Virus record (IMG/VR): IMGVR_UViG_3300045999_010033
Span: 124,001 to 188,000 of that record
Strand: one strand, 5' to 3'
Length of the DNA: 64,000 nucleotides
Shown: one piece after another, positions 12,669 to 39,925 of the stretch
Layout: every line of letters starts with the position of its first letter
Numbering within the stretch: position 1 is the stretch's first letter
Translations under genes and position numbers: made by a program
The notes under the pieces: model-generated
Seen by the model: the letters and a program-made list of their open reading frames with translations, nothing else
Databases searched by the model: none
What the model was told of the DNA's origin: nothing

Positions 12669-13235
12669 TTATAAACATCCTGTTACGTAAACTACATATA
12701 AATATTGTCCAACATTAGAATCATAAGTATAATCGTATTGATATGTTGCATTTAAGCTGGTTATTCCAACACTAGATGTTACTAATGTAGAAATAGACGC
12801 GGTATATTGACTTCCATCGTTTTTCCACGGTTTACCATAGTATACTTCTAAATCTCCGGCAGTAGCAACACTACCTGATATATTAATATCAATTAAACCA
12901 TTTTCAGTTCCTAAATCAATAATTACCATTGTTTTTGAATAGCAGTAATCCGATATGTGATATAAAGATGCAGTATTTTGAGATAATGTGTAAGCGCTAT
13001 GGTCATAATCGTACCAATAAGACATTGAGTAATTGAGGCTGTTTGGAGAATTAAATTTTCCTTCGGGAAGTGATATTCCTCCTACGTTTATTGGTGCGTA
13101 TATGTTTGTAGCAGATAACGCCCAATTATTAAGTGCCAACAAAGAACCTTGCAACTCATAATTATTAACTAAACTTTGAGATGTTTCGGTTCTCACCATA
13201 CTCATAGAAATAGGACCACTAGACGGTAAAGCCAT
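12669..13235 (-). CDS. putative fibre-tip accessory protein (188 aa)
   Basis: N-terminus MALPSSGPISMSMVRTE resembles small proteins that follow S74-chaperone fibres; overlaps the fibre gene end by 17 nt. Confidence 0.6.
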   Translation of the reverse strand: MALPSSGPISMSMVRTETSQSLVNNYELQGSLLALNNWALSATNIYAPINVGGISLPEGKFNSPNSLNYSMSYWYDYDHSAYTLSQNTASLYHISDYCYSKTMVIIDLGTENGLIDINISGSVATAGDLEVYYGKPWKNDGSQYTASISTLVTSSVGITSLNATYQYDYTYDSNVGQYLYVVYVTGCL

Positions 13236-16200
13236 AATTTCTTAATTTTCTTTTTAAATCATGTATTTGAATCTGCTGCTCCTTAACTGCCTCAATCAAT
13301 AAAGGTATAATCTTTTCGTAACGCACTGAAAGATAACCGGTATCATTCTGTCTTATAGCTTCAGGTAATACCGATTGTATTTCTTGAGCAATCACACCAA
13401 CATCTACGCCATCGTATCCATGTATGGTTTTATATTCCGGCTTCCAATTAAATCGCACACCTGATAATGTATTTACTTTATCTAATGCGTTTTCAATCGG
13501 ACTTATTATATCTTTTAATCTTTCATCCGATGTAGAATATGCTACAATATCGTTACTTGCATCTATTCTACCATCAGTATCACTCGGACTTATATTTCCT
13601 CCAACTGCAAGAGAACCTGCTGTTATTTTAACATCTCCAGTAACAACATTTATTGCATCTCCGTTTGATGTACCAGTCACACTTAATGTGTTTCCATTGA
13701 ATGTCAAATTAGATTCAACTGTAGCGTTTGGTGCACTTCCATTTAATGTTATAACTCCATTATCAGTTGTGCCAGTTAGTGTTAAAGAGCCATTTGCCCC
13801 ACTACTTCCACTACTTCCACTACTACCGCTGCTTCCATTTTGTCCGCTCGTTCCGCTGCTGCCGCGCGTGCCACTAGTACCACTGCTTCCGGCGGTTCCG
13901 CTAGTCCCGCTACTACCTGCTGAACCGCTACTTCCTGCAGTTCCGCTGCTACCACTACTACCTGCAGTTCCGCTGCTTCCTGCAGATCCACTACTGCCAC
14001 TGCTGCCGGTTGAACCGCTACTTCCTGCAGTTCCGCTGCTTCCGCCGGTTCCACTTGTCCCGCTGCTACCGCGCGTACCGCTCGTGCCGCTACTGCCACT
14101 GCTACCCGTTGAACCGCTACTGCCACTACTTCCTGCAGTTCCACTACTACCGGTTGAACCGCTACTTCCGCTACTTCCATTTTGTCCACTGGTCCCGCTG
14201 CTTCCTGCTGTCCCGCTACTTCCGCTGCTACCGCGCGTTCCACTAGTTCCGCTGCTTCCGCTGCTTCCATTTTGTCCGCTGGTCCCGCTGCTTCCTGCAG
14301 TTCCGCTGCTGCCACTACTACCAGTTGAACCACTACTTCCGCTACTTCCGCTGCTTCCATTTTGTCCACTGGTCCCGCTGCTTCCTGCAGTTCCGCTGCT
14401 GCCACTGCTTCCTGCTGTCCCGCTACTTCCGCTGCTTCCGCGCGTTCCACTAGTTCCGCTGCTTCCTGCGGTTCCGCTACTACCACTACTACCGTTTTGT
14501 CCACTGGTCCCACTACTTCCGCTGCTTCCACTACTACCGCTGCTTCCATTTTGTCCGCTCGTTCCACTACTTCCTGCAGTTCCGCTGGTCCCGCTACTTC
14601 CTGCAGTTCCGCTGGTCCCGCTACTTCCTGCAGTTCCGCTGCTGCCGGTTGAACCACTACTTCCACTGCTACCTGCTGTCCCGCTGCTACCACTGCTGCC
14701 GGTTGAACCACTACTTCCGCTGCTGCCACTGCTTCCGGCAGTTCCGCTACTACCACTACTTCCGGCAGTTCCGGATGCACCTCTACGACCCGATATATTT
14801 ATATCCCAATTACTACGATTAGTAGTTACAGTATTAAATGTTATATTTAAAATTAATGTTGTTCCTGAGTAGGAAGTTATATTACCTTCCATGTATTCGT
14901 TAGCATCTAAACCATACGCTACAATTAAAGTTTGTCCATTAGTATATGATAATTCGGCAGATGCTACCGTAAAAGTTTTTGAACCGGTTCCAGTTCCGTG
15001 AGTAGTGGTCGATGTTGTTGCATATCTACCTCCTGAAATTCCTGATGATCCACTACTTCCACTACTTCCACTTGTTCCTGCACTACCGCTGCTTCCACTG
15101 CTTCCGCTACTTCCACTACTTCCTGCAGTTCCGCTCGTTCCGCTACTTCCATTTTGGCCGCTCGTTCCACTACTTCCGCTACTTCCTGCAGATCCACTAC
15201 TGCCGCTGCTACCAGTTGAACCGCTACTACCTGCCGAGCCAGACGTACCACTACTTCCACTACTTCCGGTTGACCCGCTGCTACCGCTCGTTCCACTACT
15301 GCCATTTTGTCCGCTCGTTCCACTGCTTCCGCTACTTCCATTTTGTCCACTCGTTCCACTGGTCCCGCTACTTCCGCTACTTCCGCTGCTTCCACTGCTA
15401 CCTGTCGTTCCGCTGCTTCCTGCGGTTCCGCTGCTTCCACTTATTCCGGCGGTGCCGCTACTTCCACTACTTCCACTGCTTCCATTTTGTCCACTCGTAC
15501 CACTGCTTCCGCTACTTCCACTACTTCCGGTCGTTCCGCTACTTCCTGCAGTTCCGCTACTTCCGCTTATTCCTGCAGTACCGCTGCTTCCGCTGCTTCC
15601 TGCGGTTCCGCTACTTCCGCTGCTTCCATTTTGTCCACTCGTGCCACTACTACCATTTTGTCCGCTGCTTCCGCTGCTTCCACTGGTCCCCGAAGAGCCC
15701 GCAGGACCCGTAGCTCCTCCTAAGTTTACATCCCAACCATCTACGGTGGCGGTACCACTTATAGAATCTACATTTATTGTTAATAAGTTTGCGGCATAGG
15801 TAATGACCGTACCTTCTATTTTGTTTCCCGGATTACCAATGTCTGCTATTAATACCGGTTGTCCGGTTGTATATGAAAGGCCCGGAGTATTAAGGGTAAA
15901 TGAAATATCATCATTTACATTTATTGCCGAAAGTGTAAATTCTGTGTATGATGTTGTTGAGTATTTATCACCACCACTTTGTCCACTAGTACCACTCGAT
16001 CCAGATGATCCTGCTGTCCCACTTTCTCCGCTTGTTCCGCTACTTCCACCCGCACCGCCAATACCCGAAGTTCCATAATAAAGTCTATTATCGGTATCTA
16101 TTACTATTGTTCGGGTAGCACTATTATTTTCAGTTATAGTTGGTAAATAAAACGCACCACTTATAATTATTTCATCGGTATTTGCAATAAATAGGTCACT

Positions 16201-17403
16201 TCTTGCTCCATCATTTGTACCGTCACCTATTATGAAAAGTCCAGTTGTGTTATTTTTTCTATTATATTTTCCTACTACAGTTTGATATGAACCGGATGCA
16301 ATTGTTCCAATGCCTTCTGCGTGAGATGCTTCACCAAGTGCAACCGTGTTTGAACCTTCGGCGTGGGAATATAATCCTCTTGCTTCGGTGTAGTATCCCT
16401 CCGCGTGTGATGCAGTTTGATATGTTTGTGTAGAATATCCTTCCGCATGAGATGCCACTCCGGTTGCGGTAGTTGAACGTCCTTGTGCTACGGAATATAT
16501 CGCAGTTGCATTTGATTGATATCCCATTGCTACTGATGCAGTTCCTGATGCAGTTGTACCTATACCTTGTTCAATTGATGCACTTACTTTTAATTTATTT
16601 TCATTAAATGTTAAGTTTATAGATGCTGTCGCAGCTAATGGATTTGTTCCATCTGCTACCAATACTCTATTAGTGTTTGGTGTATGTATTCCTGTGAAAG
16701 AAACCCCACTACTGCCACTACTACCTGCGGTTCCGCTACTTCCTGCAGTCCCACTGCTACCACTGCTACCCGCGGTTCCGCTACTACCACTGCTTCCGGC
16801 CGAACCACTACTTCCACTACTTCCTGCAGTTCCTGCTACTCCACTACTTCCGCTGCTACCACTTGAGCCGGTATTTCCGCTGGTCCCGCTCGTGCCGCTA
16901 CTTCCGCGCGTTCCGGACGTACCGCTACTTCCACTTGTACTGCTGGTTCCGCTGCTGCCACTACTGCCATCTTTTCCACTACTTCCGCTACTTCCTGCCG
17001 AACCGCTACTTCCACTAACACCACTACTTCCTGCCGAACCGCTACTACCATTTGTCCCACTATTTCCAGATGACCCGCTACTACCGGCCGAACCGCTACT
17101 ACCTGCAGTTCCGGATGTGCCGTTTACTGCAGAAACTGTTGTATATTGTAATAATCCGGTTGTTGTATCTACAACGACGTATGTTGCTATTGAATTGTTA
17201 ATTGTAACTCCGGTTGCATACAACTGAGTTCCTTTCACATTTCCAGTAATTAGAACATTACCGGTTGTTTGTACGTTTAATGGTAATAAAGAAATGGTTG
17301 AACTGCCATCATTTATTTTTAGTACACTACCATCTAAGTAAAATTCACCGTGCGATAGAGATGGTGTTGATCCACCACGTCTAATTTGAAAAATAGATGC
17401 CAT
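13219..17403 (-). CDS. tail fibre (1394 aa) with Gly-Ser/Thr triplet blocks, YadA/Hep_Hag-like head repeats and C-terminal peptidase S74 intramolecular chaperone
   Basis: N-terminal IFQIRRG anchor motif; 14-aa repeats xSHAEGxxT (~16290-16580); YSTSDERLKDIISPIENALDKV...VGVIAQEI...VRYEKIIPLLIEAVKE is S74-type. Confidence 0.85.
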   Translation of the reverse strand: MASIFQIRRGGSTPSLSHGEFYLDGSVLKINDGSSTISLLPLNVQTTGNVLITGNVKGTQLYATGVTINNSIATYVVVDTTTGLLQYTTVSAVNGTSGTAGSSGSAGSSGSSGNSGTNGSSGSAGSSGVSGSSGSAGSSGSSGKDGSSGSSGTSSTSGSSGTSGTRGSSGTSGTSGNTGSSGSSGSSGVAGTAGSSGSSGSAGSSGSSGTAGSSGSSGTAGSSGTAGSSGSSGVSFTGIHTPNTNRVLVADGTNPLAATASINLTFNENKLKVSASIEQGIGTTASGTASVAMGYQSNATAIYSVAQGRSTTATGVASHAEGYSTQTYQTASHAEGYYTEARGLYSHAEGSNTVALGEASHAEGIGTIASGSYQTVVGKYNRKNNTTGLFIIGDGTNDGARSDLFIANTDEIIISGAFYLPTITENNSATRTIVIDTDNRLYYGTSGIGGAGGSSGTSGESGTAGSSGSSGTSGQSGGDKYSTTSYTEFTLSAINVNDDISFTLNTPGLSYTTGQPVLIADIGNPGNKIEGTVITYAANLLTINVDSISGTATVDGWDVNLGGATGPAGSSGTSGSSGSSGQNGSSGTSGQNGSSGSSGTAGSSGSSGTAGISGSSGTAGSSGTTGSSGSSGSSGTSGQNGSSGSSGSSGTAGISGSSGTAGSSGTTGSSGSSGSSGSSGTSGTSGQNGSSGSSGTSGQNGSSGTSGSSGSTGSSGSSGTSGSAGSSGSTGSSGSSGSAGSSGSSGTSGQNGSSGTSGTAGSSGSSGSSGSSGSAGTSGSSGSSGSSGISGGRYATTSTTTHGTGTGSKTFTVASAELSYTNGQTLIVAYGLDANEYMEGNITSYSGTTLILNITFNTVTTNRSNWDINISGRRGASGTAGSSGSSGTAGSSGSSGSSGSTGSSGSSGTAGSSGSSGSTGSSGTAGSSGTSGTAGSSGTSGTAGSSGTSGQNGSSGSSGSSGSSGTSGQNGSSGSSGTAGSSGTSGTRGSSGSSGTAGSSGSSGTAGSSGTSGQNGSSGSSGSSGSTGSSGSSGTAGSSGTSGQNGSSGSSGTSGTRGSSGSSGTAGSSGTSGQNGSSGSSGSTGSSGTAGSSGSSGSTGSSGSSGTSGTRGSSGTSGTGGSSGTAGSSGSTGSSGSSGSAGSSGTAGSSGSSGTAGSSGSAGSSGTSGTAGSSGTSGTRGSSGTSGQNGSSGSSGSSGSSGANGSLTLTGTTDNGVITLNGSAPNATVESNLTFNGNTLSVTGTSNGDAINVVTGDVKITAGSLAVGGNISPSDTDGRIDASNDIVAYSTSDERLKDIISPIENALDKVNTLSGVRFNWKPEYKTIHGYDGVDVGVIAQEIQSVLPEAIRQNDTGYLSVRYEKIIPLLIEAVKEQQIQIHDLKRKLRNYGFTV
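13790..14790 (-). repeat. (Gly-X-Y)n block, X/Y = Ser/Thr/Ala, with GQN and GTR units
   Basis: GC-rich imperfect 9-nt tandem repeats; translation GTAGSSGSSGSTGSS...; boundaries approximate. Confidence 0.95.
15030..15718 (-). repeat. (Gly-X-Y)n Ser/Thr block
   Basis: Imperfect 9-nt tandem repeats, GSSGTSGQNGSS units; boundaries approximate. Confidence 0.95.
16705..17121 (-). repeat. (Gly-X-Y)n Ser/Thr block
   Basis: GTSGTAGSSGSAGSS...GSSGVS; 9-nt periodicity. Confidence 0.95.
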
Positions 17404-17459: not shown

Positions 17460-19550
17460 TCAAATGTGCGATTTAAGAGAATCAATCACAATTTTTGCTG
17501 TAATTGATTTAGTGCATTCAAATTGTCGGTCAGTTCCTTTATGAATAGGACACCAATTCCAATCTCCCGCATCTAATCGGTGTGTGTTGAAACAATTTGA
17601 ACACTTATCTTGCGGTGCGGTTATTCTTATTGTGTTTGATTTAGTTTCTGTATAGTCTGCACTAAATCCTGATATTATACACATTCTGGTCCCCACTGCC
17701 CAACTTAACCAACTAAGTCCGCTACTTATTCCTATGAATAATTTTGATTTTTGCAATATTTCTATTACGTTATCAAATGAACTTTCTTCTAATTTTTCTA
17801 TACCGGGCGGATGCCAATTGCCCATGTATCCATTACCTTCTTTTGATAGTAAAACTACACGATATCCTGCCGATTTAAGGTAATCTACAACTTCTTGCCA
17901 ACCCGTTGGATTATTCCAATATTTGGCTTGAGCAGTTGAATGTATTGCTATTGAAACTATATTTTCTTTTTCTATATTTGGTTTTAATTTTATATTTGGT
18001 TTAATTTCTTTAAAATCGAGGCCAAGTATATCAGATGCAGTTTTTTGCAATTCTTGTGGTTTAAAATCTAATGGATTTTTATTATAATCAACATTTCCCT
18101 CTGCATTATAGTACCAACCAATTGTGTACATTGCATACAAATCGTTTACAACATCACCAGGATTTACAAATTCTATCTCAGGGTAGTTTTCCTTAAACAG
18201 ATTATTATGAAAAGTTGAACATATTACATTACAATCGTGCTTCTTTCTAAATTCATCTACATATGGAAACCATGCTAACGTATCTCCTATGGATTTAGAA
18301 TCTAACGCAATATAAACACGCTTACCTTTTAGTGATATTTCATATTTGTATCTCGTTTCACCATCATCTGCTATTACCATCCAATCTACATAATGAGATT
18401 TATTTGTTTTAATCCAACAATTACGGCCTATGATGCCTGAATGTTCTATTCTTCCAGTTTTTTTATCAATAAATTGTACGTTATATCTTTTATCCGGTCC
18501 ACCTTTTATTTCAAAAAACGCACTTTGTATAAAATTAATATTAAAAGATGGTCTTTCTTTTAAAGATGGTTTTGGATTTATTTTTGTAAGATTATAATTT
18601 TTTATTAAAATTTCTCGCATAGAATCTGAATTAATATAATATTTTATTAATTTTTTTGTTATGTTTTTCCAAGATAGTTCATTTGCCTGCGATAACGCAT
18701 CCGATTTATACTCTACGTATGTAAAATTATGCATTAAATATTCAATTGCTTGCACAATTAAATCTACATCACGTTCAACATACACCATACCCTTTATTGA
18801 GTTATCGGATTCAAATGTACCAATTACGGGTAATCCGCATGCCATTGCTTCCAATAGTGTAAGGTTTGGATGCCCTGCTTCTAATACCGATGGATGTAAG
18901 AATATAGTATGTTGCTTATATAAATCTCTCAACTCTTCTTCCGAAACGTCATATAATATTGTTAATTTATCATAATCACTTGGGTACTTTTGGAAATAAT
19001 TTTTGTTGTTTGATGGCCCTGCAATGGTTATTGGTAATCCCATTCGTTTTGCCGCTTCTATTGCAAATCCAAACCCTTTACGGTCTTCGGTTTGGTCAAA
19101 AGCAAACCCATTGTTGGCTACACAAAGTAATCGGTGTTCCGTTGTTTCACCCGGAGTAAACCAATCAGTATTAACACCATGTGAAAGGTATTCAGGTATT
19201 CCATCAAAGTATTCAATAAGGTATTTTGCAGGAACAAATGCACGTTTGGCATTACGAATAGCTTTTAGATTTTCCTTATACAATTCCGAATCCTTACCAT
19301 ATAAAAATGTATGGTGGTCATGTAATGTAAAGTAGTATGGGATACCACGTTCATACGCCATATTGGCCAAGTTTGCTACATGGATATGAACGATATCTTC
19401 ACTACCATCTATATCATCTAAATATTTTATTTGGGAATCGTATCCTAAATCCAATAGGTTATTATGAATTTCCCAAATTATTTTTTCAACAGCTCCCCAT
19501 CCATTTGGAGGTATTGGCAGTAACCCCGGAGTGACATTAACTATTTTCAT
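17460..19550 (-). CDS. bifunctional glycosyltransferase: N-terminal GT4 (GT-B) domain plus C-terminal Aah/TibC-like (autotransporter O-heptosyltransferase family) domain
   Basis: GT4: IPPNGWGAVEKII, EAGHPNLTLLEAMACGLP. C-terminal: KRVYIALDSKSIGDTLAWFPYV, FIGISSGLSWLSWA and the 4-Cys motif CSNCFN...WNWCPIHKGTDRQFECTKSIT. Confidence 0.8.
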   Translation of the reverse strand: MKIVNVTPGLLPIPPNGWGAVEKIIWEIHNNLLDLGYDSQIKYLDDIDGSEDIVHIHVANLANMAYERGIPYYFTLHDHHTFLYGKDSELYKENLKAIRNAKRAFVPAKYLIEYFDGIPEYLSHGVNTDWFTPGETTEHRLLCVANNGFAFDQTEDRKGFGFAIEAAKRMGLPITIAGPSNNKNYFQKYPSDYDKLTILYDVSEEELRDLYKQHTIFLHPSVLEAGHPNLTLLEAMACGLPVIGTFESDNSIKGMVYVERDVDLIVQAIEYLMHNFTYVEYKSDALSQANELSWKNITKKLIKYYINSDSMREILIKNYNLTKINPKPSLKERPSFNINFIQSAFFEIKGGPDKRYNVQFIDKKTGRIEHSGIIGRNCWIKTNKSHYVDWMVIADDGETRYKYEISLKGKRVYIALDSKSIGDTLAWFPYVDEFRKKHDCNVICSTFHNNLFKENYPEIEFVNPGDVVNDLYAMYTIGWYYNAEGNVDYNKNPLDFKPQELQKTASDILGLDFKEIKPNIKLKPNIEKENIVSIAIHSTAQAKYWNNPTGWQEVVDYLKSAGYRVVLLSKEGNGYMGNWHPPGIEKLEESSFDNVIEILQKSKLFIGISSGLSWLSWAVGTRMCIISGFSADYTETKSNTIRITAPQDKCSNCFNTHRLDAGDWNWCPIHKGTDRQFECTKSITAKIVIDSLKSHI

Positions 19551-20349
19551 TTATATAATTTAATATCTTTTCGTTTTCTAACTTATCTTTTGTACCATGA
19601 TAAAAATATACACGACTGGAATCTTCACATTGTTCGTACATATTTTCATCTATAAAACTTTTTTTAATATTATAGTTTTTTTCACACAATTTAAATGTAG
19701 TAAATTTATGCGTATTTACAAAAATTCTATCATATTTTTCATTTAAATTATTTTTCCATAATAAAACATTTGCAGCGGTTTCATCTCTAAATGGAAAATA
19801 TGATGTGTGATTTTTTAAAAGATATTTATTTTCACAAATAGATTTCCATTCTTCTAAAAAATCAATTGAGTGTTTATCAAACGTAAAAAAACAAGCCATA
19901 ACATAAAACATAGATCTGTCTACTACTCCAAAGTATTTCATTAATTTTGTTTCATCAAATAAAATTGTTTCAGTATCACTTTTCCAAAAAGTAAATGGAT
20001 ATTCTATAACTCCCTCCGAAAAGCAAGGATATCCTAAATTTGATTTTATTTGAAATTGATTAAATCTTTTAGAAAGTATTATATCAGAGTCAAAATAACA
20101 AAAATCACCGTCAGTTCTATTCAACGCATCTAAAGAAATGGATGGTTTATAAAAATCAAATTTAGGTAAATAATTAATTTTTGGCCAAGGTATTTTTATT
20201 AAATTTTTGTGCTGTAAATTCGAATTGTATCCAATTGTATAATAGAATATATTATCCGGCTCAAAATTCGCGTATTGAAACGATTTTAAAAGATTTGAGA
20301 CCTGATATTCATAATTTATATCCGATAATACTACTATATTCATTTCCAA
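19537..20349 (-). CDS. GT-A fold glycosyltransferase (DxD type)
   Basis: 270 aa; FYKP, CYFDSD (DxD), FRDETAANVLLW and FYHG motifs; overlaps both neighbours (translational coupling). Confidence 0.7.
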   Translation of the reverse strand: MEMNIVVLSDINYEYQVSNLLKSFQYANFEPDNIFYYTIGYNSNLQHKNLIKIPWPKINYLPKFDFYKPSISLDALNRTDGDFCYFDSDIILSKRFNQFQIKSNLGYPCFSEGVIEYPFTFWKSDTETILFDETKLMKYFGVVDRSMFYVMACFFTFDKHSIDFLEEWKSICENKYLLKNHTSYFPFRDETAANVLLWKNNLNEKYDRIFVNTHKFTTFKLCEKNYNIKKSFIDENMYEQCEDSSRVYFYHGTKDKLENEKILNYINENS

Positions 20350-25535: not shown

Positions 25536-25539
25536 TATA

Positions 25540-30571: not shown

Positions 30572-30602
30572 TTTTTGATAACTCCTTTTAATTTGTTATA
30601 GA

Positions 30603-30610: not shown

Positions 30611-30613
30611 TTT

Positions 30614-31324: not shown

Positions 31325-31325
31325 A

Positions 31326-32030: not shown

Positions 32031-32284
32031 GCTCCAGGCATTTGTAGTTCATGCGTCCATTCAGTTCCTGCAAGTATTTCAATCATTTCGGAATAAGTAT
32101 ACGGACCTTCTTTGGTCGTTAATTGAGATACACACATTGGTTCAACTCCGTCCCATTTGATAAAAGTTTTAGTTTCATCTACCGATTTTTTTACTGTCTC
32201 TACTGAAGTTTCAAGAACTTGAGAAAAATCTATTTTATGTAATTCTGATACATTAAAGATTATAAAATTTCTATTTTCGTACAT
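32027..32284 (-). CDS. small conserved protein (85 aa), paralogue of 24084..24335
   Basis: Aligns with 24084..24335; ATGA overlap with the next gene. Confidence 0.75.
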   Translation of the reverse strand: MYENRNFIIFNVSELHKIDFSQVLETSVETVKKSVDETKTFIKWDGVEPMCVSQLTTKEGPYTYSEMIEILAGTEWTHELQMPGA

Positions 32285-32304
32285 AGTTTTCGTTTTTATT
32301 TTAA

Positions 32305-33019: not shown

Positions 33020-36000
33020 TTATATTGTTCTAATTATGAATTTGCCAGTCCAAGTTCCTGCTGATGCAGAACCTGTCATTACCATATTTGACCCGGATAT
33101 TATTGATGTAAAGGCTACGCCTGATGTGTTTCCAAAATCAACCGTAGATACATCACTAACAACAGTTGATGCCCCAGACCACATCGCTATAAATTGTCCC
33201 ATTCTTGCATTAGAACCACTCCTAATTGTGTATTCAACAAACATTCCATCGTAAGAACCGGTACTCATACTATAAATTGTAGTTGAACCTGTTATAGATA
33301 CACGCTTAGTTGTATTCAATACGGGTGCAATACTATCTCCCATCAATACCGTATCATCCGAAAATACTTCCAATATCGGAAGACCCGAAATATCATTCAC
33401 AGAGAATAGTGAACCCGAAAGGTTATCAGTAACTGAAAATAGTTCACCTTGGCTGCCTAATACACTAAATATAGATTGAGAAGAACCTGAACCATGTATG
33501 ATTGCACGTTGTACTCCGGAGCCGGATACTAATAGTGTGGATGATGTAAGTGATGTTGCAATTACGCTACCCGTTACATTTAATACACTACCATTAAAAT
33601 TAAGATTTGCTTCCGCAACTGCACTATTTACACTACCATCCGATGTTAATACTCTATTATCTGCAGGTGTCGCTATTGTGGTAAATCCGGTACCACTTGT
33701 TCCTGCAGTTCCGCTGCTTCCTGCTGTCCCGCTGCTGCCACTACTGCCGGTTGAACCGCTACTTCCACTGCTTCCTGCTGTCCCGCTGCTGCCACTACTG
33801 CCGGTTGAACCGCTACTTCCACTGCTTCCTGCTGTCCCGCTGCTGCCACTACTGCCGGTTGAACCACTACTTCCACTGCTTCCTGCCGTGCCGCTGCTGC
33901 CACTACTTCCAGCGGTTCCGCTACTGCCGCTGCTACCGGTTGAACCACTACTGCCCGCACTACCACTGCTTCCTGCAGTTCCGCTGCTTCCGCTACTACC
34001 GCTTGTTCCCGAAGAACCTGCTGTCAATAGATTTGTTCCTACACCTGCTGCTGCTTCTGTTAAATCTATATATGCACCCCTTGCTGCACCTCCTTGTTCA
34101 AAAAATCTTAATTTATTTTGATAAGAATCGATAGTTATACCACTACCAGTGAGTGAGTTATTAGTAGCTGATTTATTTAGTAATATTTCACCACCCTCGT
34201 CACCCGATTGATATAATATACTTAATTTAGTACCATCAAATGTTAAAAGTGATTCTGCGTTCGCTTCCCCTTGAGTTCCCGTTGCGGTTAATATTCTATC
34301 ATTAGCATTGTTTAATATGTTTGCAACACCACTCGTACCGCTGCTTCCGCTGCTTCCTGCAGTTCCGCTGCTGCCACTACTGCCGGTTGAACCGCTACTT
34401 CCACTGCTTCCTGCAGTTCCGCTGCTGCCACTACTGCCGGTTGAACCGCTACTTCCACTGCTTCCTGCAGTTCCGCTGCTGCCACTACTGCCACTGCTTC
34501 CTGCTGTCCCGCTGCTGCCACTGCTGCCGGTTGAACCGCTACTTCCACTGCTTCCTGCAGTTCCGCTGCTGCCGCTACTGCCGGTTGAACCACTGCTTCC
34601 GCTACTTCCACTGCTTCCTGCCGTCCCCGATGTGCCCGAAGTTGCTGCAGTATAAGATGTACCGTTTATTATCAGTGAACCGGATATACTAACAGAGCCG
34701 GTAAATTGATGTGTATTTGATACCAATGTTCCGAATTGTGTGGAACCGGTAATCAATTCGGTCGAAGAAGTAATAATTTGCGAAACTATTCTTTGTGCAA
34801 CTAATGTATCTCTTACCGTAAAGTTATCCGCAGAAGATGCGGTTAGCGCCAGTACCGCGAGTGATGCGGTTTGTGCAAATGATGCGGATGTGGCATTAAG
34901 TGGTGTACCATTTATCCAAACCCCACCATTGTAAACTAATGCCTGTCCATTTGTAGGAGTTGTAATATTTACATCCGATAAATCATCCAGAGTTTGTGTT
35001 ATATTTGTAGCAGCTGAAGACCCACCCGATGTATTTCTAAAAGAACCCGCTTGTATAAAAATTGCTTGTGATGTATTTGTTAAATCACTAGCATTTCCCT
35101 GAACTAATAGGTATCCCGCAAAAATTAATGATTTAGCGGTAAACTCACCTTCTACAAAACTATCAGAAAGTAACGCAGATAAAGCGTTTGCTATTGATGT
35201 ATATGAATTATGTCCGTAGTATATTACTGCACGCTTAGATTCGGGACTATAAAATATTCTTTGAATAGTAACGTTAGGACCAGATACACTTGATAATCCA
35301 TTTCCGTTATCATATTTTGTAGGATCCACTACGGTGTAATAGTTGCCATTATTACTGTCCAAATATATTCCAGATCCAGTTCTATACGCCCTAGCCATAG
35401 ATGCAGTAAGAGCAGGTGTAGCAGTATAATGTGATGGACTATTAGGATTTTGTGAATAATATCCACCTAAAAAGAATCCCGTACCATCTCCTATATTGAT
35501 TCTTAGCGAACCACTTTGGCCCGATGGTGTGAATCCATTTACTTTTATCGGTCCGAATGACCTAATAAAATCATTTTGTTGTGTATCACTATTATATGTA
35601 GTTTGTACACTACTTGCGTATCCTGTTATACTTGAATAGTTTGGATGTGTAACTAATCCAAGAGGTATTGCCTCCTCGTATTGAGTTTCATCAAAATAAG
35701 AAGTTTGTTGGAAGATTACTCCTGTCCCATCAACGTATAAATAAGTCGTTTGTGATGAAGTTATGTATTGTGCAGATGCAGTATAATCATTCCAATTAAC
35801 GTAAGTAATAATAGGATTGATTTCCGACCCGCTGGTGGCATTCATATTATTAATGATACCACTACCTTTTTTAACATATATTACACTGCCACTAAAAGAA
35901 ATACCTCCACCATATAATATTCCCGAACTTAATCCACCTTCTAACCATTTGAATTTGGTTAAGTTACCATTTTGACGATAATATAAATCATATCCGGTAG

Positions 36001-39000
36001 CTGTGTTAGAAGCAGATGTAAATAAGTACGATGCAGTTATGTTATTGGGTCCTGGATCTTGACCTGGATCTAATCTTAAATGTCCTTGTAATGTAAAGTT
36101 AGCAGTTGCATTTAATGATCCAGATACATTAACACTACCCGATAGTACACTTATTCCTATTAAGGTATTAGACCCACTTGTTATTAAACTACCGGTAACT
36201 ATTTGGTTTCCTACACTAACTGATGTTCCTATAAATGTCTGAGACCCCGATACGTTTATGCTGCCGGTTATGGTTTGCGTTCCTATAATCGTACTTGAAC
36301 CCGTCAATCCATAAGAACCCGTTAATTGTTTAGAGTTTATCCAAACACTACCACTTCTAACTAAAAGGTCTCCCGATGTTATTCCATTAATTTTAACATC
36401 ATGCAGTTCATCTAATTCGTAACCATTATCTATTTTTACATATATCGAACCAACAGTCGCACTTACTCTTTCTACATATCCTAGTCTAACGGAATGTAGT
36501 GGCGCTTGTGGTGTGGTTTGTGTGTATTGTCCTGCCGAACTACTTAAATATACAAGTCCGCCGGCAGTTAATCCTAATGTGTTTAATTCATTGAGTGGAC
36601 CTTCGGTTTGTACGAATCCCTCCTCTCCCGAAAGTATTTGTTCTGCTACAAATCCTAATGTATTTGCCGAACCCAATTCAGCTGTCGCAGACGCACGTTT
36701 TACTGAAACACGATTTCCTTGTGAACCAAAAATATAAACTACAGTTCCTTTTGTTAATGTTGTCGCTTCTGCGTTAAATGCACGTATGAATAATTCTTCA
36801 CCAATTGCCAAGTTTACATTTCCACCTTTCAGTCCGAGATTCAATGTTCCGTATCCATCATCCCACCCCAATCTACCTTCTGCCTTTGGTTGGTCAGAAC
36901 CGGTAACAAAATTAATTACACTTGCGTTATTAATTGAGCCTGATATTTGAAGATTTTCAGAATACGATGCGGACACCGCTCGTAATGCCCAACTTGCAGT
37001 ACCATATAATGAGCTTGTAATATTTGTCGCATTTATAGACCCGGTTACATTTAAAACCGAACCATCAAATGTTAAGTTAGCTTCGGCATTAGCACTATTT
37101 GCACTACCATCCGATGTTAGTATTCGATTATCTAAAGGATTTGATATTGTATTAAATCCTGTACCGCTGGTGCCTGCACTTCCACTACTTCCTGCAGTTC
37201 CGCTGCTTCCTGCTGTCCCACTGCTTCCGCTGCTTCCACTGCTTCCTGCCGTTCCGCTGCTCCCTGCTGTCCCACTGCTTCCACTGCTTCCTGCCGTTCC
37301 GCTGCTTCCGCTGCTTCCATCGGTTCCGCTACTTCCACTGCTTCCTGCCGTTCCGCTGCTTCCGCTGCTTCCATCGGTTCCGCTACTTCCACTGCTTCCT
37401 GCCGTTCCACTGCTTCCGCTGCTTCCATCGGTTCCGCTGCTTCCACTGCTTCCACTGCTTCCATCGGTTCCGCTACTTCCACTGCTTCCTGCAGTTCCGC
37501 TGCTTCCACTGCTTCCTGCCGTTCCGCTGCTTCCGCTGCTTCCATCGGTTCCGCTGCTCCCTGCTGTTCCGCTGCTTCCACTGCTTCCTGCAGTTCCGCT
37601 ACTCCCTGCTGTCCCACTGCTTCCGCTGCTTCCGCTACTTCCATCGGTTCCGCTGCTTCCACTGCTTCCTGCCGTTCCGCTGCTCCCTGCTGTCCCACTG
37701 CTTCCGCTACTTCCATCGGTTCCGCTGCTTCCACTGCTTCCTGCCGTTCCGCTGCTTCCGCTGCTCCCTGCAGTTCCGCTGCTGCCGGTTGCTCCTACTG
37801 CTGCTATCCATTGAGTTCCATCCCAACGATATATGTCGGTATCGGATGTATTATAATATAAAGAGCCACTTTTGAATGAACCGGTCGGACTTGAACTATA
37901 ATTGGGTAATTTAAATTGCGTTTCTGCATCAATAGCAGATGCTGTCAAACTTCCTGAAAGTGAAAGTGAGCTTGTAAATATTATTGTATTTACATTTACA
38001 GAAAATTCAGCTCCACCCGATATAGATACTGATCCGGTAAATTGATGTAAATCACTCCCACTTACTCCGAATTTAGATGAACCCGTAACAAAACTGATAG
38101 ATGATGTAATAGTTTGGACATGTATTCTTTGAGCAACTATTGTATCACTAACATTTATCGAACCGGTTACCACTAATGTATTACCATCAAATGTTAAATT
38201 GGATTCGGCAACCGCAGTATTGGTAGTTCCATCCGATGTAAGTATTCTATTATTTGCTGGATTTGAAATTGTATTAAATCCTGTCCCACTCGTACCACTA
38301 CTTCCGCTGCTTCCGCTGCTTCCACTACTTCCTGCAGTTCCGCTGCTCCCTGCTGTCCCACTGCTTCCGCTGCTTCCATCGGTTCCGCTGCTTCCACTAC
38401 TTCCTGCAGTTCCGCTGCTTCCACTACTTCCTGCAGTTCCGCTGCTCCCTGCTGTCCCACTGCTTCCGCTGCTTCCTGCAGTTCCACTGCTTCCTGCAGT
38501 TCCGCTGCTTCCGCTGCTTCCTGCAGTTCCGCTGCTTCCTGCAGTTCCGCTGCTTCCTGCAGTTCCTGCCGCTGCTATCCATTGAGTTCCATTCCAACGA
38601 TATATGTTTGTATCACCTATATTATAATATAATGAACCGGTGCTAAATGATCCCGATGGGTTAGAGTTGTAAGTTGGTAAAGTAAATCCGGTTGCAGCAC
38701 CAATATAAGATGATGTGAAACTTCCACTAATTAACATTGAACCGGTAAAGGAAATACTATCAATATTTGCAGTGAACACATTCCCAACACTACCCGATAT
38801 ATTTATCGAACCAGTTACTTCGAGTCCTCCACTAATTTGAGTATTCGTGTTTACTTTGAATCCATATGCAGGGTCTACCGAGGCAGTAACACTGCCTGAT
38901 GATATTCTTGAAAGGTTTAATCCTACTACACTTGATGCGGATATGTTTGTTATTCCTGCACCATTTCCTATAAATGAACCAGAGAATGAACCACTAAATA

Positions 39001-39925
39001 TGCCATTACCGGTTTGCGCAAAAGATGCAGAATCGGACCAACTTGCAGTTCCATATACACGTTTGTTACTACTATCTACATATATGTCACCTCTAATATG
39101 GGTTTTAGTTATATTTGTGTTTCCAATTGTAGTCGTATTAGAACCTTTACCAATTGTGTTATATCCTATTACAATTTGATTGGTCTCCGAACTTGCGCTT
39201 GGTTTTGTATTTGCTCCAATAAAAACCGATTGATTAGAATCTATGTTGTTTCCTGCTTCAGCAGCCTTTCCGGCATTTACACCAACCGCGACGTTGTAAT
39301 CGCCCGTTTCCATAGCAATCAGTGCTTCAGACCCAATTGCTACATTGTAGTTTGTATAGCTAGATGAATGTAATGTATAAGACCCTATTGCAGTGTTACC
39401 ATCACCTGTGTTTTCATTTAATGCGTATGAGCCTATTGCTGTGTTTTGTTGTCCGGTATTTAGTGATAGTGCGTTATTACCAACTACGGTATTAGTTGTG
39501 AAACTTCCATCCCCACGGCCGATTCTGACACCATGTACATATATGTCGTTATTTGTAGTTAGTGAGCCAGAAACATCTACAGAACCACTAAATTGTGAAT
39601 TAAAATTTACCTTAAAGCCAAGTATAGAATCTACCGATGCGGTCACACTACCCGATGATATACTAGAAAGATTTAATCCAACTACACTCGATGCCGATAT
39701 ATTTGTTAATCCTGAACCGTTTCCAAAAAAGGAGCCGGAAAATGAGCCACTAAATGCAGATACCGTTGATCCAATCTCAATTATTTTTTCACCACTAGAA
39801 CCACTGGTTTTCATAAACAACTTACCATCGTAAGTGTTTATTGCCAATTCACCATAATCCAATGAAGATGTGGTTGGTACACGACCGGGTACTGCACTTC
39901 TACGCAGTTTTATTATTTGACTCAT
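33020..39925 (-). CDS. giant tail fibre (2301 aa) with four Gly-Ser/Thr blocks
   Basis: N-terminal IIKLRRSAVPGRVPTTSSLDYGELAINTYDGKLF fibre-anchor motif; NTAIG beta-helix-like repeats (~39280-39480); repeated shaft modules. Confidence 0.85.
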   Translation of the reverse strand: MSQIIKLRRSAVPGRVPTTSSLDYGELAINTYDGKLFMKTSGSSGEKIIEIGSTVSAFSGSFSGSFFGNGSGLTNISASSVVGLNLSSISSGSVTASVDSILGFKVNFNSQFSGSVDVSGSLTTNNDIYVHGVRIGRGDGSFTTNTVVGNNALSLNTGQQNTAIGSYALNENTGDGNTAIGSYTLHSSSYTNYNVAIGSEALIAMETGDYNVAVGVNAGKAAEAGNNIDSNQSVFIGANTKPSASSETNQIVIGYNTIGKGSNTTTIGNTNITKTHIRGDIYVDSSNKRVYGTASWSDSASFAQTGNGIFSGSFSGSFIGNGAGITNISASSVVGLNLSRISSGSVTASVDPAYGFKVNTNTQISGGLEVTGSINISGSVGNVFTANIDSISFTGSMLISGSFTSSYIGAATGFTLPTYNSNPSGSFSTGSLYYNIGDTNIYRWNGTQWIAAAGTAGSSGTAGSSGTAGSSGSSGTAGSSGTAGSSGSSGTAGSSGTAGSSGSSGTAGSSGSSGTDGSSGSSGTAGSSGTAGSSGSSGSSGSSGTSGTGFNTISNPANNRILTSDGTTNTAVAESNLTFDGNTLVVTGSINVSDTIVAQRIHVQTITSSISFVTGSSKFGVSGSDLHQFTGSVSISGGAEFSVNVNTIIFTSSLSLSGSLTASAIDAETQFKLPNYSSSPTGSFKSGSLYYNTSDTDIYRWDGTQWIAAVGATGSSGTAGSSGSSGTAGSSGSSGTDGSSGSSGTAGSSGTAGSSGSSGTDGSSGSSGSSGTAGSSGTAGSSGSSGTAGSSGTDGSSGSSGTAGSSGSSGTAGSSGSSGTDGSSGSSGSSGTDGSSGSSGTAGSSGSSGTDGSSGSSGTAGSSGSSGTDGSSGSSGTAGSSGSSGTAGSSGTAGSSGSSGSSGTAGSSGTAGSSGSAGTSGTGFNTISNPLDNRILTSDGSANSANAEANLTFDGSVLNVTGSINATNITSSLYGTASWALRAVSASYSENLQISGSINNASVINFVTGSDQPKAEGRLGWDDGYGTLNLGLKGGNVNLAIGEELFIRAFNAEATTLTKGTVVYIFGSQGNRVSVKRASATAELGSANTLGFVAEQILSGEEGFVQTEGPLNELNTLGLTAGGLVYLSSSAGQYTQTTPQAPLHSVRLGYVERVSATVGSIYVKIDNGYELDELHDVKINGITSGDLLVRSGSVWINSKQLTGSYGLTGSSTIIGTQTITGSINVSGSQTFIGTSVSVGNQIVTGSLITSGSNTLIGISVLSGSVNVSGSLNATANFTLQGHLRLDPGQDPGPNNITASYLFTSASNTATGYDLYYRQNGNLTKFKWLEGGLSSGILYGGGISFSGSVIYVKKGSGIINNMNATSGSEINPIITYVNWNDYTASAQYITSSQTTYLYVDGTGVIFQQTSYFDETQYEEAIPLGLVTHPNYSSITGYASSVQTTYNSDTQQNDFIRSFGPIKVNGFTPSGQSGSLRINIGDGTGFFLGGYYSQNPNSPSHYTATPALTASMARAYRTGSGIYLDSNNGNYYTVVDPTKYDNGNGLSSVSGPNVTIQRIFYSPESKRAVIYYGHNSYTSIANALSALLSDSFVEGEFTAKSLIFAGYLLVQGNASDLTNTSQAIFIQAGSFRNTSGGSSAATNITQTLDDLSDVNITTPTNGQALVYNGGVWINGTPLNATSASFAQTASLAVLALTASSADNFTVRDTLVAQRIVSQIITSSTELITGSTQFGTLVSNTHQFTGSVSISGSLIINGTSYTAATSGTSGTAGSSGSSGSSGSTGSSGSSGTAGSSGSSGSTGSSGSSGTAGSSGSSGSSGTAGSSGSSGSTGSSGSSGTAGSSGSSGSTGSSGSSGTAGSSGSSGTSGVANILNNANDRILTATGTQGEANAESLLTFDGTKLSILYQSGDEGGEILLNKSATNNSLTGSGITIDSYQNKLRFFEQGGAARGAYIDLTEAAAGVGTNLLTAGSSGTSGSSGSSGTAGSSGSAGSSGSTGSSGSSGTAGSSGSSGTAGSSGSSGSTGSSGSSGTAGSSGSSGSTGSSGSSGTAGSSGSSGSTGSSGSSGTAGSSGTAGTSGTGFTTIATPADNRVLTSDGSVNSAVAEANLNFNGSVLNVTGSVIATSLTSSTLLVSGSGVQRAIIHGSGSSQSIFSVLGSQGELFSVTDNLSGSLFSVNDISGLPILEVFSDDTVLMGDSIAPVLNTTKRVSITGSTTIYSMSTGSYDGMFVEYTIRSGSNARMGQFIAMWSGASTVVSDVSTVDFGNTSGVAFTSIISGSNMVMTGSASAGTWTGKFIIRTI
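33690..34020 (-). repeat. (Gly-X-Y)n Ser/Thr block
   Basis: 9-nt tandem repeats including near-exact longer units; boundaries approximate. Confidence 0.95.
34325..34640 (-). repeat. (Gly-X-Y)n Ser/Thr block
   Basis: GTAGSSGSSGSTGSSGSS units; boundaries approximate. Confidence 0.95.
37160..37798 (-). repeat. (Gly-X-Y)n Ser/Thr block with GTD units
   Basis: GTDGSSGSSGTAGSS units; boundaries approximate. Confidence 0.95.
38280..38570 (-). repeat. (Gly-X-Y)n Ser/Thr block
   Basis: GTAGSS units; boundaries approximate. Confidence 0.95.

What the first reader, a model, noticed from the sequence alone, without database searches (positions are those of the whole stretch)
13219..39925. Candidate phage-encoded O-glycosylation system for Ser/Thr-rich collagen-like fibres
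Seen: three coupled genes (17460-24002) encode about five glycosyltransferase domains (two GT4, one DxD GT-A, one further GT-A-like, one Aah/TibC-like) plus two FkbM methyltransferases. They sit between fibre genes carrying about 4.2 kb (estimated from coordinates) of Gly-Ser/Thr repeats. Established: streptococcal and staphylococcal serine-rich repeat adhesins are encoded beside GT4 (GtfA/B) and accessory GTs that O-glycosylate them; Aah/TibC heptosylate Ser in autotransporter adhesins; glycosylated Thr stabilises the hydroxyproline-poor cuticle collagen of Riftia. Inference: the phage builds a methylated glycan coat on its fibres for triple-helix stability, shielding, or receptor/EPS interaction. 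No nucleotide-sugar synthesis genes are in the window, so donors would come from the host or elsewhere in the genome.
Basis: partly seen in the sequence, partly recalled or inferred. Interest (0 to 1): 0.88.

Follow-up and report, generated by a model that had tools for sequence, protein, structure and literature searches.

The report
Phage glycosylation genes beside Ser-rich collagen fibres
A large aquatic phage carries, inside its tail-fibre genes, sugar-adding and methylating enzymes whose key member belongs to a protein-serine glycosyltransferase family, and the same enzyme sits next to Gly-Ser/Thr collagen-like proteins in unrelated bacteria, so these fibres are probably sugar-coated.

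Summary
Three overlapping minus-strand genes (17460-24002) encode two GT4 domains, an Aah/TibC-type domain, two GT-A-fold domains and two FkbM methyltransferases. They lie between three fibre genes with 1410 residues (4230 nt) of proline-free Gly-Ser/Thr-Ser/Ala triplets.

The TibC-like domain scores 286 bits against TIGR04414 (cutoff 200). It keeps the catalytic Asp, three of four donor-binding residues and all four iron-finger Cys. It lacks the adenine-reading Arg, so the donor sugar is uncertain.

The GT pair is conserved in the structural module of a widespread aquatic myovirus lineage (74 of 82 loci).

The strongest new evidence comes from bacteria. In two clades, the gene next to a standalone TibC-like gene encodes a secreted protein or lipoprotein with G-S/T-S/T repeats (9 of 11 loci, 38-773 nt away).

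In phages, such repeats lie within 10 kb of the GT in 32 of 80 loci. That is only a modest enrichment over a same-lineage control.

The most likely function is cytoplasmic O-glycosylation of the fibres' repeats, followed by glycan extension and methylation. No modified fibre peptide has been observed, and no paper in the library links this enzyme family to collagen-like proteins. I rate it a new variant of a known kind.

The parts
13219..17403 (-). fibA, 1394-aa fibre. It has five Gly-X-Y blocks (aa 95-235, 444-479, 563-793, 872-1207; nt about 16699-17121, 15967-16074, 15025-15717, 13783-14790) and a C-terminal Peptidase_S74 intramolecular chaperone (aa 1292-1350, nt 13354-13530). Candidate acceptor.
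   Evidence: Pfam Collagen E 5.5e-97; Peptidase_S74 E 1.1e-14; 741 residues in GXY, no Pro.
17472..18497 (-). GT1 C-terminal domain (aa 352-693), an Aah/TibC-type (BAHT) GT-B protein O-glycosyltransferase. Proposed priming enzyme acting on Ser/Thr.
   Evidence: TIGR04414 286 bits (cutoff 200). PDB TibC 4rap/4rb4, E 2e-55. D423, T539, K543, W614 and Cys650/653/667/679 conserved; V595 in place of TibC Arg286.
18621..19550 (-). GT1 N-terminal GT4 (GT-B) domain fused to the TibC-like domain. Proposed to add the second sugar.
   Evidence: PF13692 47 bits, PF00534 38 bits; the fusion of about 693 aa is common among the top metagenomic homologues.
19537..20349 (-). ORF270, a GT-A fold glycosyltransferase with an invariant DxD motif (D85, D87 counted from the ATG at 20343). 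No Pfam family.
   Evidence: no family hit; invariant DxD, DET, H249; pLDDT 87; Foldseek PDB: GT6 enzymes BoGT6a and ABO GTA/GTB, and CpsY; prob 1.0, TM 0.5-0.6.
22998..24002 (-). GT3 N-terminal GT4 domain (aa 1-335) with an E-X7-E motif at E266-E274.
   Evidence: PF00534 44.5 bits; motif; homologue present in 71 of 82 GT1-containing loci.
22008..22997 (-). GT3 middle region (aa 336-665): GT-A-like nucleotide-binding fold with a conserved E-x-D motif, plus a C-terminal beta-sandwich. A stand-alone protein of about 325 aa in many relatives.
   Evidence: pLDDT 84; Foldseek: KdsB, alpha-1,3-GalT, PBCV-1 A64R, glycogenin; TM to target about 0.5. The assignment as a transferase rather than a nucleotidyltransferase is not certain.
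20343..21662 (-). GT3 C-terminal half (aa 781-1220): two FkbM-family SAM methyltransferase domains.
   Evidence: PF05050 120 bits (2 stretches); TIGR01444 190.6 bits (cutoff 37.7).
25540..28218 (-). fibB, 892-aa fibre with one 48-triplet GXY block (aa 111-254, nt 27457-27888). Candidate acceptor.
33020..39925 (-). fibC, 2301-aa fibre with four GXY blocks (aa 454-549, 711-923, 1764-1868, 1970-2080). It follows the neck/adaptor-like genes. Candidate acceptor.
   Evidence: Collagen E 2.4e-67.
24340..33018 (-). Seven paralogous proteins of about 230 aa with a Laminin_G_3 / concanavalin-A-like lectin fold (24340-25098 and six between 28490 and 33018), interleaved with the fibres (fibB lies inside this span). 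Their relation to the glycan is unknown.

Best explanation
The three coupled genes form a soluble, cytoplasmic protein O-glycosylation line for the phage's own fibres.

Proposed steps, all inferred rather than shown:
1. The TibC-like domain of GT1 attaches a first sugar to Ser/Thr hydroxyls in the Gly-Ser/Thr-Ser/Ala repeats of fibA, fibB and fibC, before or during fibre assembly.
2. The fused GT4 domain, the GT4 domain of GT3 and the two GT-A-fold domains extend this sugar to a short oligosaccharide.
3. The two FkbM domains O-methylate it.
4. Nucleotide-sugar donors come from the host or from genes outside the window.

Shown here: domain identities, conservation of catalytic residues, gene order, conservation of the module across relatives, and the recurrent neighbourhood of this enzyme subfamily with G-S/T-S/T repeat proteins.

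Inferred: the acceptor, the order of the steps, the sugar identities, methylation of the glycan, and any benefit such as stabilising a proline-free triple helix or shielding.
For: 1. Family membership. GT1 aa 352-693 scores 286 bits on TIGR04414 (cutoff 200) and aligns to TibC structures at E 2e-55. The catalytic Asp110 (as D423), Thr226, Lys230, Trp305 and the four iron-finger Cys are conserved, and they are invariant in 12 homologues. According to PMC4358343, this family is described only as cytoplasmic protein-Ser O-glycosyltransferases.

2. Independent neighbourhood evidence.
- 17 bacterial or MAG loci carry a stand-alone TibC-like gene. Of these, 14 have S/T-rich GXY runs within 8 kb and 10 have them within 1 kb.
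- In the Methylobacter luteus chromosome, a 287-aa signal-peptide protein with GTAGTSGTS repeats lies directly upstream of the gene, between mfd and glcE/glcF.
- In Arenicellales, two lipoproteins with GSS repeats flank the gene.
- These neighbours hit Pfam Collagen, and the enzymes pass the TIGR04414 cutoff.
- The repeat is the only feature shared by the bacterial neighbours and the phage fibres.

3. Phage relatives.
- GT1 and GT3 co-occur in 74 of 82 loci, in the structural module next to sheath or terminase genes.
- Domains are shuffled and fused among relatives: ORF270+GT3mid, ORF270+GT1, and FkbM+GT4+TibC in Mel-JY01.
- S/T-rich, Pro-free GXY runs lie within 10 kb in 32 of 80 loci, and in 28 of 47 dereplicated tree rows.
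- In the 735-kb phage LR756501 and in Microcystis phage Mel-JY01, the module abuts GSS/GTS collagen-like genes.
- Four GT-bearing contigs have GSS repeats elsewhere on the same contig. Three of them had no local GXY.
- The closest isolate lacking the module, Flavobacterium phage immuto (160 kb), has no GXY run of 8 or more triplets.

4. No membrane segments (maximum KD19 of 1.2), no flippase, polymerase or lipid-carrier genes, and no minus-strand terminator between 12 and 29 kb.
Against: - There is no direct evidence of modification.
- 48 of 80 phage loci have no GXY run within 10 kb. One whole clade places the module between replication genes and the sheath gene.
- Against a same-lineage control, local enrichment is significant overall (29/79 against 2/53, p = 5e-6). 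It is weak for loci of at least 10 kb (p = 0.015) and not significant for loci of at least 15 kb.
- Of 120 GSS-repeat loci sampled from IMG/VR, only 2 carried a GT homologue in the fetched stretch.
- The adenine-contacting Arg286 of TibC is Val here, and Ile in Methylobacter, so heptosylation from ADP-heptose is not assured.
- The fibres also hold long Ser-rich non-collagen segments that could be the acceptor.
- Some MAG loci with low G+C may be phage contigs rather than bacterial DNA.
Confidence: 0.6

Rival explanations
1. The module glycosylates other virion proteins (capsid, sheath, tube, or Ser-rich beta-structured parts of the fibres), as in mycobacteriophages. Its proximity to collagen-like repeats would then be a by-product of sitting in the structural module.
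For: The module is conserved next to the sheath gene in 41 loci and next to the terminase gene in 27, whether or not a GXY gene is near. 48 of 80 loci lack local GXY. Known TibC substrates are beta-helical repeats, not collagen (PMC4358343). The fibres hold long Ser-rich non-collagen stretches.
Against: The bacterial two-gene cassettes pair the enzyme with small proteins whose only shared feature is the G-S/T-S/T repeat. One of these is little more than lipobox, repeat and poly-Asp tail.
Confidence: 0.2
2. The glycosyltransferases remodel the host envelope (LPS or exopolysaccharide) during infection, for example to block superinfection. This is the usual reading for glycosyltransferases in fibre regions of aquatic myophages.
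For: A paper on pelagimyophages interprets glycosyltransferases in the hypervariable fibre region this way (PMC7029224). GT4, GT2 and FkbM domains are common in O-antigen clusters. Accessory genes in relatives include a DegT aminotransferase and GT2.
Against: The signature domain is a protein O-glycosyltransferase family member that scores above its curated cutoff. There are no membrane segments, no Wzx/Wzy, and no initiating lipid-carrier transferase. The genes lie in the late structural operon. The bacterial neighbourhood points to protein acceptors.
Confidence: 0.1
3. The enzymes glycosylate phage DNA (base hypermodification) to evade restriction.
For: Phage glycosyltransferases often act on DNA; reviews cited in PMC12619734 say so. 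The relative immuto encodes 7-deazaguanine DNA modification genes.
Against: No hydroxymethyl-pyrimidine or other base-modification genes lie beside the cluster in the window. The family assignment is to protein O-glycosylation. The genes sit among fibre genes, not replication genes, in this phage.
Confidence: 0.04

Closest known systems
Aah/TibC bacterial autotransporter heptosyltransferases (BAHT; TIGR04414; PDB 4rap/4rb4)
   Same: Homologous catalytic domain at full score. The catalytic Asp, the beta-phosphate-binding and sugar-binding Thr/Lys/Trp, the four-Cys iron finger and a hydrophobic thumb tip (Y575-M576 against F265-V266) are conserved. The protein is cytoplasmic and soluble, and the gene lies next to the gene of a repetitive Ser-rich surface protein.
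   Different: The neighbouring candidate acceptor is a Gly-Ser/Thr collagen-like repeat, not an autotransporter beta-helix. In phages the domain is fused to a GT4 domain and accompanied by further GT and methyltransferase domains, which implies an oligosaccharide rather than single heptoses. The adenine-reading Arg286 is not conserved. The first 36 or so residues of the TibC beta-barrel are not matched.
Mycobacteriophage virion glycosylation (Freeman et al. 2023, cited in PMC12619734)
   Same: Phage-encoded glycosyltransferases O-glycosylate the phage's own structural proteins in the cytoplasm.
   Different: There the acceptors are C-terminal tails of capsid and tail-tube subunits. Here the enzymes include a BAHT member and FkbM methyltransferases, and the candidate acceptors are fibres. 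Homology between the two enzyme sets was not tested.
Glycosylated collagen-like proteins: Bacillus exosporium BclA, Riftia cuticle collagen, Mimivirus fibrils (from my own knowledge; not checked with the tools)
   Same: Gly-X-Y repeats rich in Thr carry O-linked glycans. In Riftia, glycosylated Thr stabilises a hydroxyproline-poor triple helix. In BclA and giant-virus glycans the sugars are methylated or otherwise unusual.
   Different: Different enzyme families. BclA repeats contain proline, whereas the repeats here have none and are Ser-dominated. None of these systems is known to use a BAHT-family enzyme.
Serine-rich repeat adhesin glycosylation (GtfA/GtfB with accessory Sec) of streptococci and staphylococci (from my own knowledge)
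   Same: A GT4 enzyme primes Ser/Thr-rich repeats in the cytoplasm, accessory glycosyltransferases extend the glycan, and the genes are clustered with the substrate gene.
   Different: No GtfB-like partner and no SecA2/SecY2 genes were found in the window. The priming candidate here is the TibC-like domain.
Chlorovirus PBCV-1 capsid glycosylation (A64R and partners)
   Same: Virus-encoded soluble GT-A enzymes build a methylated glycan on a structural protein. A64R appears among the fold matches of the GT3 middle domain.
   Different: The fold match is weak (TM about 0.5, 8% identity). The PBCV-1 glycans are N-linked and the virus infects a eukaryote.

Membership tests
BAHT / Aah-TibC protein O-heptosyltransferases (TIGR04414) | Whole-domain profile score above the curated cutoff | tested here: met
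   286.2 bits against a cutoff of 200, aa 352-693. Homologues in L010, L001, L002, L209 and L218 score 293-333 bits.
BAHT / Aah-TibC protein O-heptosyltransferases (TIGR04414) | Catalytic base Asp110 and donor-binding Thr226, Lys230, Trp305 | tested here: met
   Aligned to D423, T539, K543 and W614. All are invariant in alignment A1.
BAHT / Aah-TibC protein O-heptosyltransferases (TIGR04414) | Arg286 contacting adenine N1 (basis of ADP-sugar specificity) | tested here: not met
   Aligned residue is V595. The Methylobacter homologue has Ile there. The mapping was done by hand from the printed HMMER alignment.
BAHT / Aah-TibC protein O-heptosyltransferases (TIGR04414) | Four-Cys iron finger (Cys339/342/358/370) | tested here: met
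   C650, C653, C667 and C679 are aligned and invariant.
BAHT / Aah-TibC protein O-heptosyltransferases (TIGR04414) | Ring dodecamer; transfer of heptose from ADP-heptose to Ser | not testable with these tools
   Only the hydrophobic thumb tip (Y575-M576) is seen to be conserved.
BAHT / Aah-TibC protein O-heptosyltransferases (TIGR04414) | Acceptor is an autotransporter passenger encoded nearby | tested here: not met
   No autotransporter family hit on any window protein scanned. The neighbours are collagen-like fibres.
GT4 glycosyltransferases (Pfam Glycos_transf_1 / Glyco_trans_1_4) | Profile score above gathering threshold; E-X7-E motif | tested here: met
   GT1: 47.2 and 38.3 bits. GT3: 44.5 and 31.1 bits. 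GT3 has E266-X7-E274. GT1 has a variant spacing, E224...E234, which is invariant in A1.
GT-A fold DxD glycosyltransferases | GT-A fold and a conserved DxD (or ExD) motif | tested here: met
   ORF270: pLDDT 87; Foldseek matches to GT6 enzymes at prob 1.0 and TM 0.5-0.6; D85/D87 invariant. GT3 middle region: a weaker match that also resembles nucleotidyltransferases, so inconclusive for that domain. Neither belongs to a curated Pfam or NCBIfam family.
FkbM methyltransferases (PF05050 / TIGR01444) | Profile score above cutoff | tested here: met
   119.7 bits (PF05050) and 190.6 bits (TIGR01444), two stretches each. The substrate (sugar or protein) was not tested.
Collagen triple-helix repeat proteins (PF01391) | Uninterrupted Gly-X-Y periodicity; imino-acid or charge content typical of stable triple helices; trimerisation module | tested here: inconclusive
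   Periodicity is met: runs of up to 112 triplets, E 5.5e-97. Proline content is zero and charged residues are rare. fibA has a Peptidase_S74 chaperone typical of trimeric fibres. Triple-helix formation cannot be tested with these tools.
Serine-rich repeat adhesin GtfA/GtfB-aSec systems | GtfA-GtfB pair and accessory Sec genes beside the substrate | tested here: not met
   No such families among the Pfam, NCBIfam or PHROG hits of the window proteins.

The most novel reading that the evidence does not exclude
A branch of the Aah/TibC family may be a dedicated glycosyltransferase for collagen-like repeats, shared by aquatic phages and free-living bacteria. On this reading:
- Its iron-finger ring oligomer would decorate rod-like Gly-Ser/Thr repeats along their length.
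- In phages, the fused and neighbouring GT and FkbM domains would elaborate the sugar into a methylated oligosaccharide.
- That oligosaccharide would take the place of hydroxyproline in stabilising or protecting proline-free triple-helical fibres.

This would be a new substrate class for the family and the first glycosylated tail or whisker fibres in phages.
Probability: 0.3. Interest if true: 0.85.

Novelty: new variant of a known kind. Interest (0 to 1): 0.72.

Why it matters
Glycosylation of phage particles has so far been shown only for mycobacteriophage capsids and tail tubes. If fibres of a widespread aquatic myovirus lineage are glycosylated by their own enzymes, this would bear on three questions:
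- how host recognition works;
- how long the particles survive in water;
- how antibodies or lectins bind them.

The lineage is large: more than 200 IMG/VR contigs and thousands of metagenomic proteins carry the enzyme.

It would also widen the Aah/TibC family beyond autotransporter adhesins of pathogens to collagen-like proteins.

Finally, it offers a testable answer to how triple helices with no proline or hydroxyproline could be stable. The bacterial two-gene cassettes, for example in culturable Methylobacter luteus, give a simple experimental entry point.

Tried and rejected
- **Reverse local test.** I scanned IMG/VR for a GSSGSSGSSG-coding DNA pattern. I rejected it as a test because the stretches are short (1-15 kb) and fibres occupy several loci per genome. 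It did show GSS repeats on four GT-bearing contigs.
- **Same-lineage control.** Loci fetched with the neck-region protein 41244-42341 turned out mostly short. The length-matched comparison therefore has little power.
- **blastn of fibA repeat DNA against 50,697 phage records.** It found only LR756501/3, which also carry GT1. The low-complexity filter and codon differences make this insensitive; Mel-JY01 was missed.
- **The 1431-aa protein as a sugar-activating enzyme.** Rejected. Its best hits are NMN adenylyltransferases at low score. It is conserved next to the terminase gene in 17 relatives' loci, and the GT-less phage immuto carries an annotated NMN adenylyltransferase, gp088, at a similar position upstream of its terminase; I did not test whether gp088 is a homologue.
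- **Promoter and terminator scan.** Uninformative: promoter-like sites are at the chance level, and there are no minus-strand terminators.
- **LR756504.** Its TibC-like domain is 33% identical, and there is no GXY run within 15 kb.
- **Literature.** Six searches (among them) found no paper that links BAHT enzymes to collagen-like proteins or describes glycosylated phage fibres. A search for Mel-JY01 found nothing.


Full report
**What the window is.** All genes of at least 150 aa that belong to the annotation lie on the minus strand. PHROG and Pfam scans identify:
- large terminase, 56658-58262
- portal, 52183-53931
- major head protein, 44070-45773
- adaptor-like protein, 42798-43985
- tail sheath, 9992-12250
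- tail tube, 9459-9947
- baseplate hub, 8516-9340

The window is therefore the structural module of a myovirus. A 100% identical locus places it on IMG/VR contig IMGVR_UViG_3300045999_010033 (221,095 bp). By my arithmetic, it covers positions 124001-188000. The head protein is closest to Microcystis phage Mel-JY01 (54%), the 484-kb uncultured phage LR756508, and Flavobacterium phage immuto (53%).

- fibA (13219-17403), fibB (25540-28218) and fibC (33020-39925) contain 741, 144 and 525 residues in Gly-X-Y runs. That is 1410 residues or 4230 nt.
- X is Ser or Thr and Y is Ser or Ala. There is no proline at all.
- Pfam Collagen E-values are as low as 5.5e-97, and fibA ends in a Peptidase_S74 intramolecular chaperone, a hallmark of trimeric phage fibres.
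- Between fibA and fibB lie GT1 (17460-19550), ORF270 (19537-20349) and GT3 (20340-24002), overlapping by 14 and 10 nt.

**Domain content.**
- GT1 is a GT4 domain fused to a domain that scores 286 bits on TIGR04414, the Aah/TibC model (cutoff 200).
- GT3 has an N-terminal GT4 domain and two FkbM methyltransferase domains.
- ORF270 has no family hit. A model from ten homologues (pLDDT 87) matches GT-A fold GT6 enzymes, and D85-x-D87 is invariant.
- GT3 residues 336-665 model (pLDDT 84) as a GT-A-like nucleotide-binding fold plus a beta-sandwich. The fold also resembles sugar nucleotidyltransferases, so the transferase assignment is less secure.
- None of the three proteins has a membrane segment. 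No minus-strand terminator-like site lies between 12 and 29 kb.

**Is the TibC-like domain a real family member?** It aligns to the TibC crystal-structure sequences at E 2e-55. I mapped the residues named in PMC4358343 onto that alignment:

| TibC residue | Role | Residue in GT1 |
|---|---|---|
| Asp110 | catalytic base | D423 |
| Thr226 | donor binding | T539 |
| Lys230 | donor binding | K543 |
| Trp305 | donor binding | W614 |
| Cys339/342/358/370 | iron finger | C650/C653/C667/C679 |
| Phe265-Val266 | thumb tip | Y575-M576 |
| Arg286 | reads the adenine of ADP-heptose | V595 (not conserved) |
| Pro300 | stereoselectivity | S609, as in Aah |

All the conserved positions in the table except the thumb tip (Y575 is conserved in at least 90% of sequences) are invariant in 12 homologues. 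The mapping was done by hand from the printed alignment. I therefore file the domain in the family but leave the donor sugar open.

**Distribution in phages.**
- More than 6400 metagenomic proteins match the domain at E ≤ 1e-10, and among the 120 best most are fusions of about 693 aa with GT4.
- In IMG/VR, 202 stretches encode relatives; 80 loci were fetched.
- A GT3 homologue accompanies GT1 in 74 of 82 loci. The sheath gene is within 10 kb in 41 loci and the terminase gene in 27.
- The domains occur in other fusions elsewhere: ORF270 with the GT3 middle domain, ORF270 with GT1, and FkbM with GT4 and the TibC-like domain in Mel-JY01. This argues for one pathway.
- A different phage lineage carries a stand-alone TibC-like gene, again with GT4-methyltransferase, GT4-FkbM and GT2 genes.

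**Co-occurrence with Gly-Ser/Thr repeats in phages.**
- Runs of at least 8 triplets lie within 10 kb of GT1 in 32 of 80 loci. With two exceptions they are 60-96% Ser/Thr and 0-4% Pro.
- After dereplication, 28 of 47 IMG/VR tree rows are positive. The negatives cluster in one clade, where the module sits between an SbcCD-like nuclease or primase and the sheath gene.
- For three contigs with no local GXY, and for a fourth that already had local runs, a separate DNA-pattern scan happened to find GSS repeats elsewhere on the same contig.
- In LR756501 and in Mel-JY01 the module adjoins GSS/GTS genes.
- The GT-less isolate immuto has no GXY run of 8 or more triplets in 160 kb.
- Against same-lineage control loci, the excess is 29/79 against 2/53 (p = 5e-6). 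It falls to p = 0.015 for loci of at least 10 kb and is not significant at 15 kb or more, where there are only 9 controls.
- The phage data alone are therefore suggestive, not decisive.

**The bacterial evidence.**
- A scan of one genome per species returned 17 loci with a stand-alone TibC-like gene.
- Fourteen have S/T-rich GXY runs within 8 kb, and ten have them within 1 kb.
- A maximum-likelihood tree shows two well-supported bacterial clades: Methylococcales with Betaproteobacteria, and Arenicellales with other Gammaproteobacteria. Both are nested among phage sequences.
- In these clades, 9 of 11 loci have the repeat gene 38-773 nt from the enzyme gene. One exception is a contig that ends at the enzyme gene.
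- In Methylobacter luteus the pair lies between mfd and glcE/glcF/miaB, so it is not a prophage. The neighbour there is a 287-aa signal-peptide protein with GTAGTSGTS repeats.
- In Arenicellales, two lipoproteins with GSS repeats and poly-Asp tails flank the enzyme gene.
- These neighbours hit Pfam Collagen, and the enzymes pass the TIGR04414 cutoff.
- Six low-G+C 'MAG' loci may be phage contigs, and I do not count them as bacterial.
- The G-S/T-S/T repeat is the only feature common to all these neighbours and the phage fibres. That is why I take the repeat to be the acceptor.

**Mechanism and rivals.** The best-supported reading is cytoplasmic priming of Ser/Thr in the repeats by the TibC-like domain, extension by the GT4 and GT-A domains, and methylation by FkbM (confidence 0.6). 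The steps after priming are inference from domain content alone.
- Glycosylation of other virion proteins remains possible (0.2).
- Host LPS/EPS remodelling is the reading given for pelagimyophage glycosyltransferases in PMC7029224. It fits poorly with a protein-directed family, the absence of membrane components and the bacterial neighbourhoods (0.1).
- DNA glycosylation has nothing in its favour here (0.04).

**Novelty.** Searches of the paper library found the TibC structural work, the mycobacteriophage virion-glycosylation reference, and papers that note glycosylation genes in aquatic phages. None connects Aah/TibC enzymes with collagen-like proteins or reports glycosylated phage fibres. 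I rate this a new variant of a known kind: protein O-glycosylation of a virus's own structural proteins, with a new enzyme-substrate pairing.

Noticed in passing
window 59600-63895 (-): A 1431-aa protein with an N-terminal HxGH nucleotidyltransferase domain (weak, NMNAT-like), an HExxH motif and a C-terminal KxDG ligase-like motif. It lies next to the terminase gene. Homologues lie in 17 relatives' loci. Mel-JY01 has an annotated 'cytidylyltransferase like protein', and immuto gp088 is annotated as NMN adenylyltransferase, at comparable positions; their homology to this protein was not tested. Function unknown, and probably not sugar activation.
   Followed up: partly
window 24340-25098 and 28490-33018 (-): Seven paralogous proteins of about 230 aa with a Laminin_G_3 / concanavalin-A-like fold (27-36% identical) are interleaved with the fibre genes. 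The same cassette (LamG protein, small 85-94 aa protein, GSS fibre) recurs in loci L132, L151, L171 and L197. They could be receptor-binding tips or lectins for the phage's own glycan.
   Followed up: partly
L209 6923-9125; L218 6477-9859; also L210-L212, L216, L219, L220, L224: A bacterial two-gene cassette: a secreted protein or lipoprotein with G-S/T-S/T collagen-like repeats next to a stand-alone Aah/TibC-family gene. It occurs in Methylococcales, Betaproteobacteria and Arenicellales chromosomes. As far as my searches show, it has not been described.
   Followed up: yes
L002 (PP395634.1) 14-2176: In Microcystis phage Mel-JY01, the first two annotated CDS (1-651 and 739-2298, minus strand) overlap a plus-strand frame holding up to 149 uninterrupted GSS/GTS triplets. 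The collagen-like gene is probably annotated on the wrong strand and may wrap around the record ends.
   Followed up: partly
L010 445-3296 and relatives L007, L016: In relatives without local collagen genes, the glycosylation island is preceded by three paralogous PF13759 2OG-Fe(II) oxygenases and a 318-aa protein of unknown family, and it contains an extra GT2. The role of the oxygenases is unknown.
   Followed up: partly
window 17460-24002: The GT cluster has lower G+C (0.28; GC3 0.16-0.22) than the window as a whole (0.355) and than the sheath, head and terminase genes (GC3 0.24-0.31). This may reflect separate origin or lower expression.
   Followed up: no
L204/L205 (NC_055915.1 49172-59988): Flavobacterium phage immuto lacks the TibC-like module and lacks GXY fibres. 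It does carry an unrelated 11-kb sugar cluster, as annotated: several glycosyltransferases, WecE-type aminotransferases, an epimerase, a methyltransferase and a 'pilin glycosylation protein'. The cluster lies outside its structural module.
   Followed up: no
window 13424-14872 (+), 15005-15799 (+), 37170-37814 (+) and others: Long open frames on the plus strand overlap the collagen-coding stretches. They are shadows of the GGN-AGY-AGY repeat and should not be annotated as genes.
   Followed up: no
window fibA aa about 290-400 and fibC aa about 140-270: Both fibres contain short repeated motifs of the type ...N/S-T-A-I/V-G..., reminiscent of trimeric-autotransporter head repeats. No Pfam hit at E ≤ 0.01, so this is only a visual impression.
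   Followed up: no
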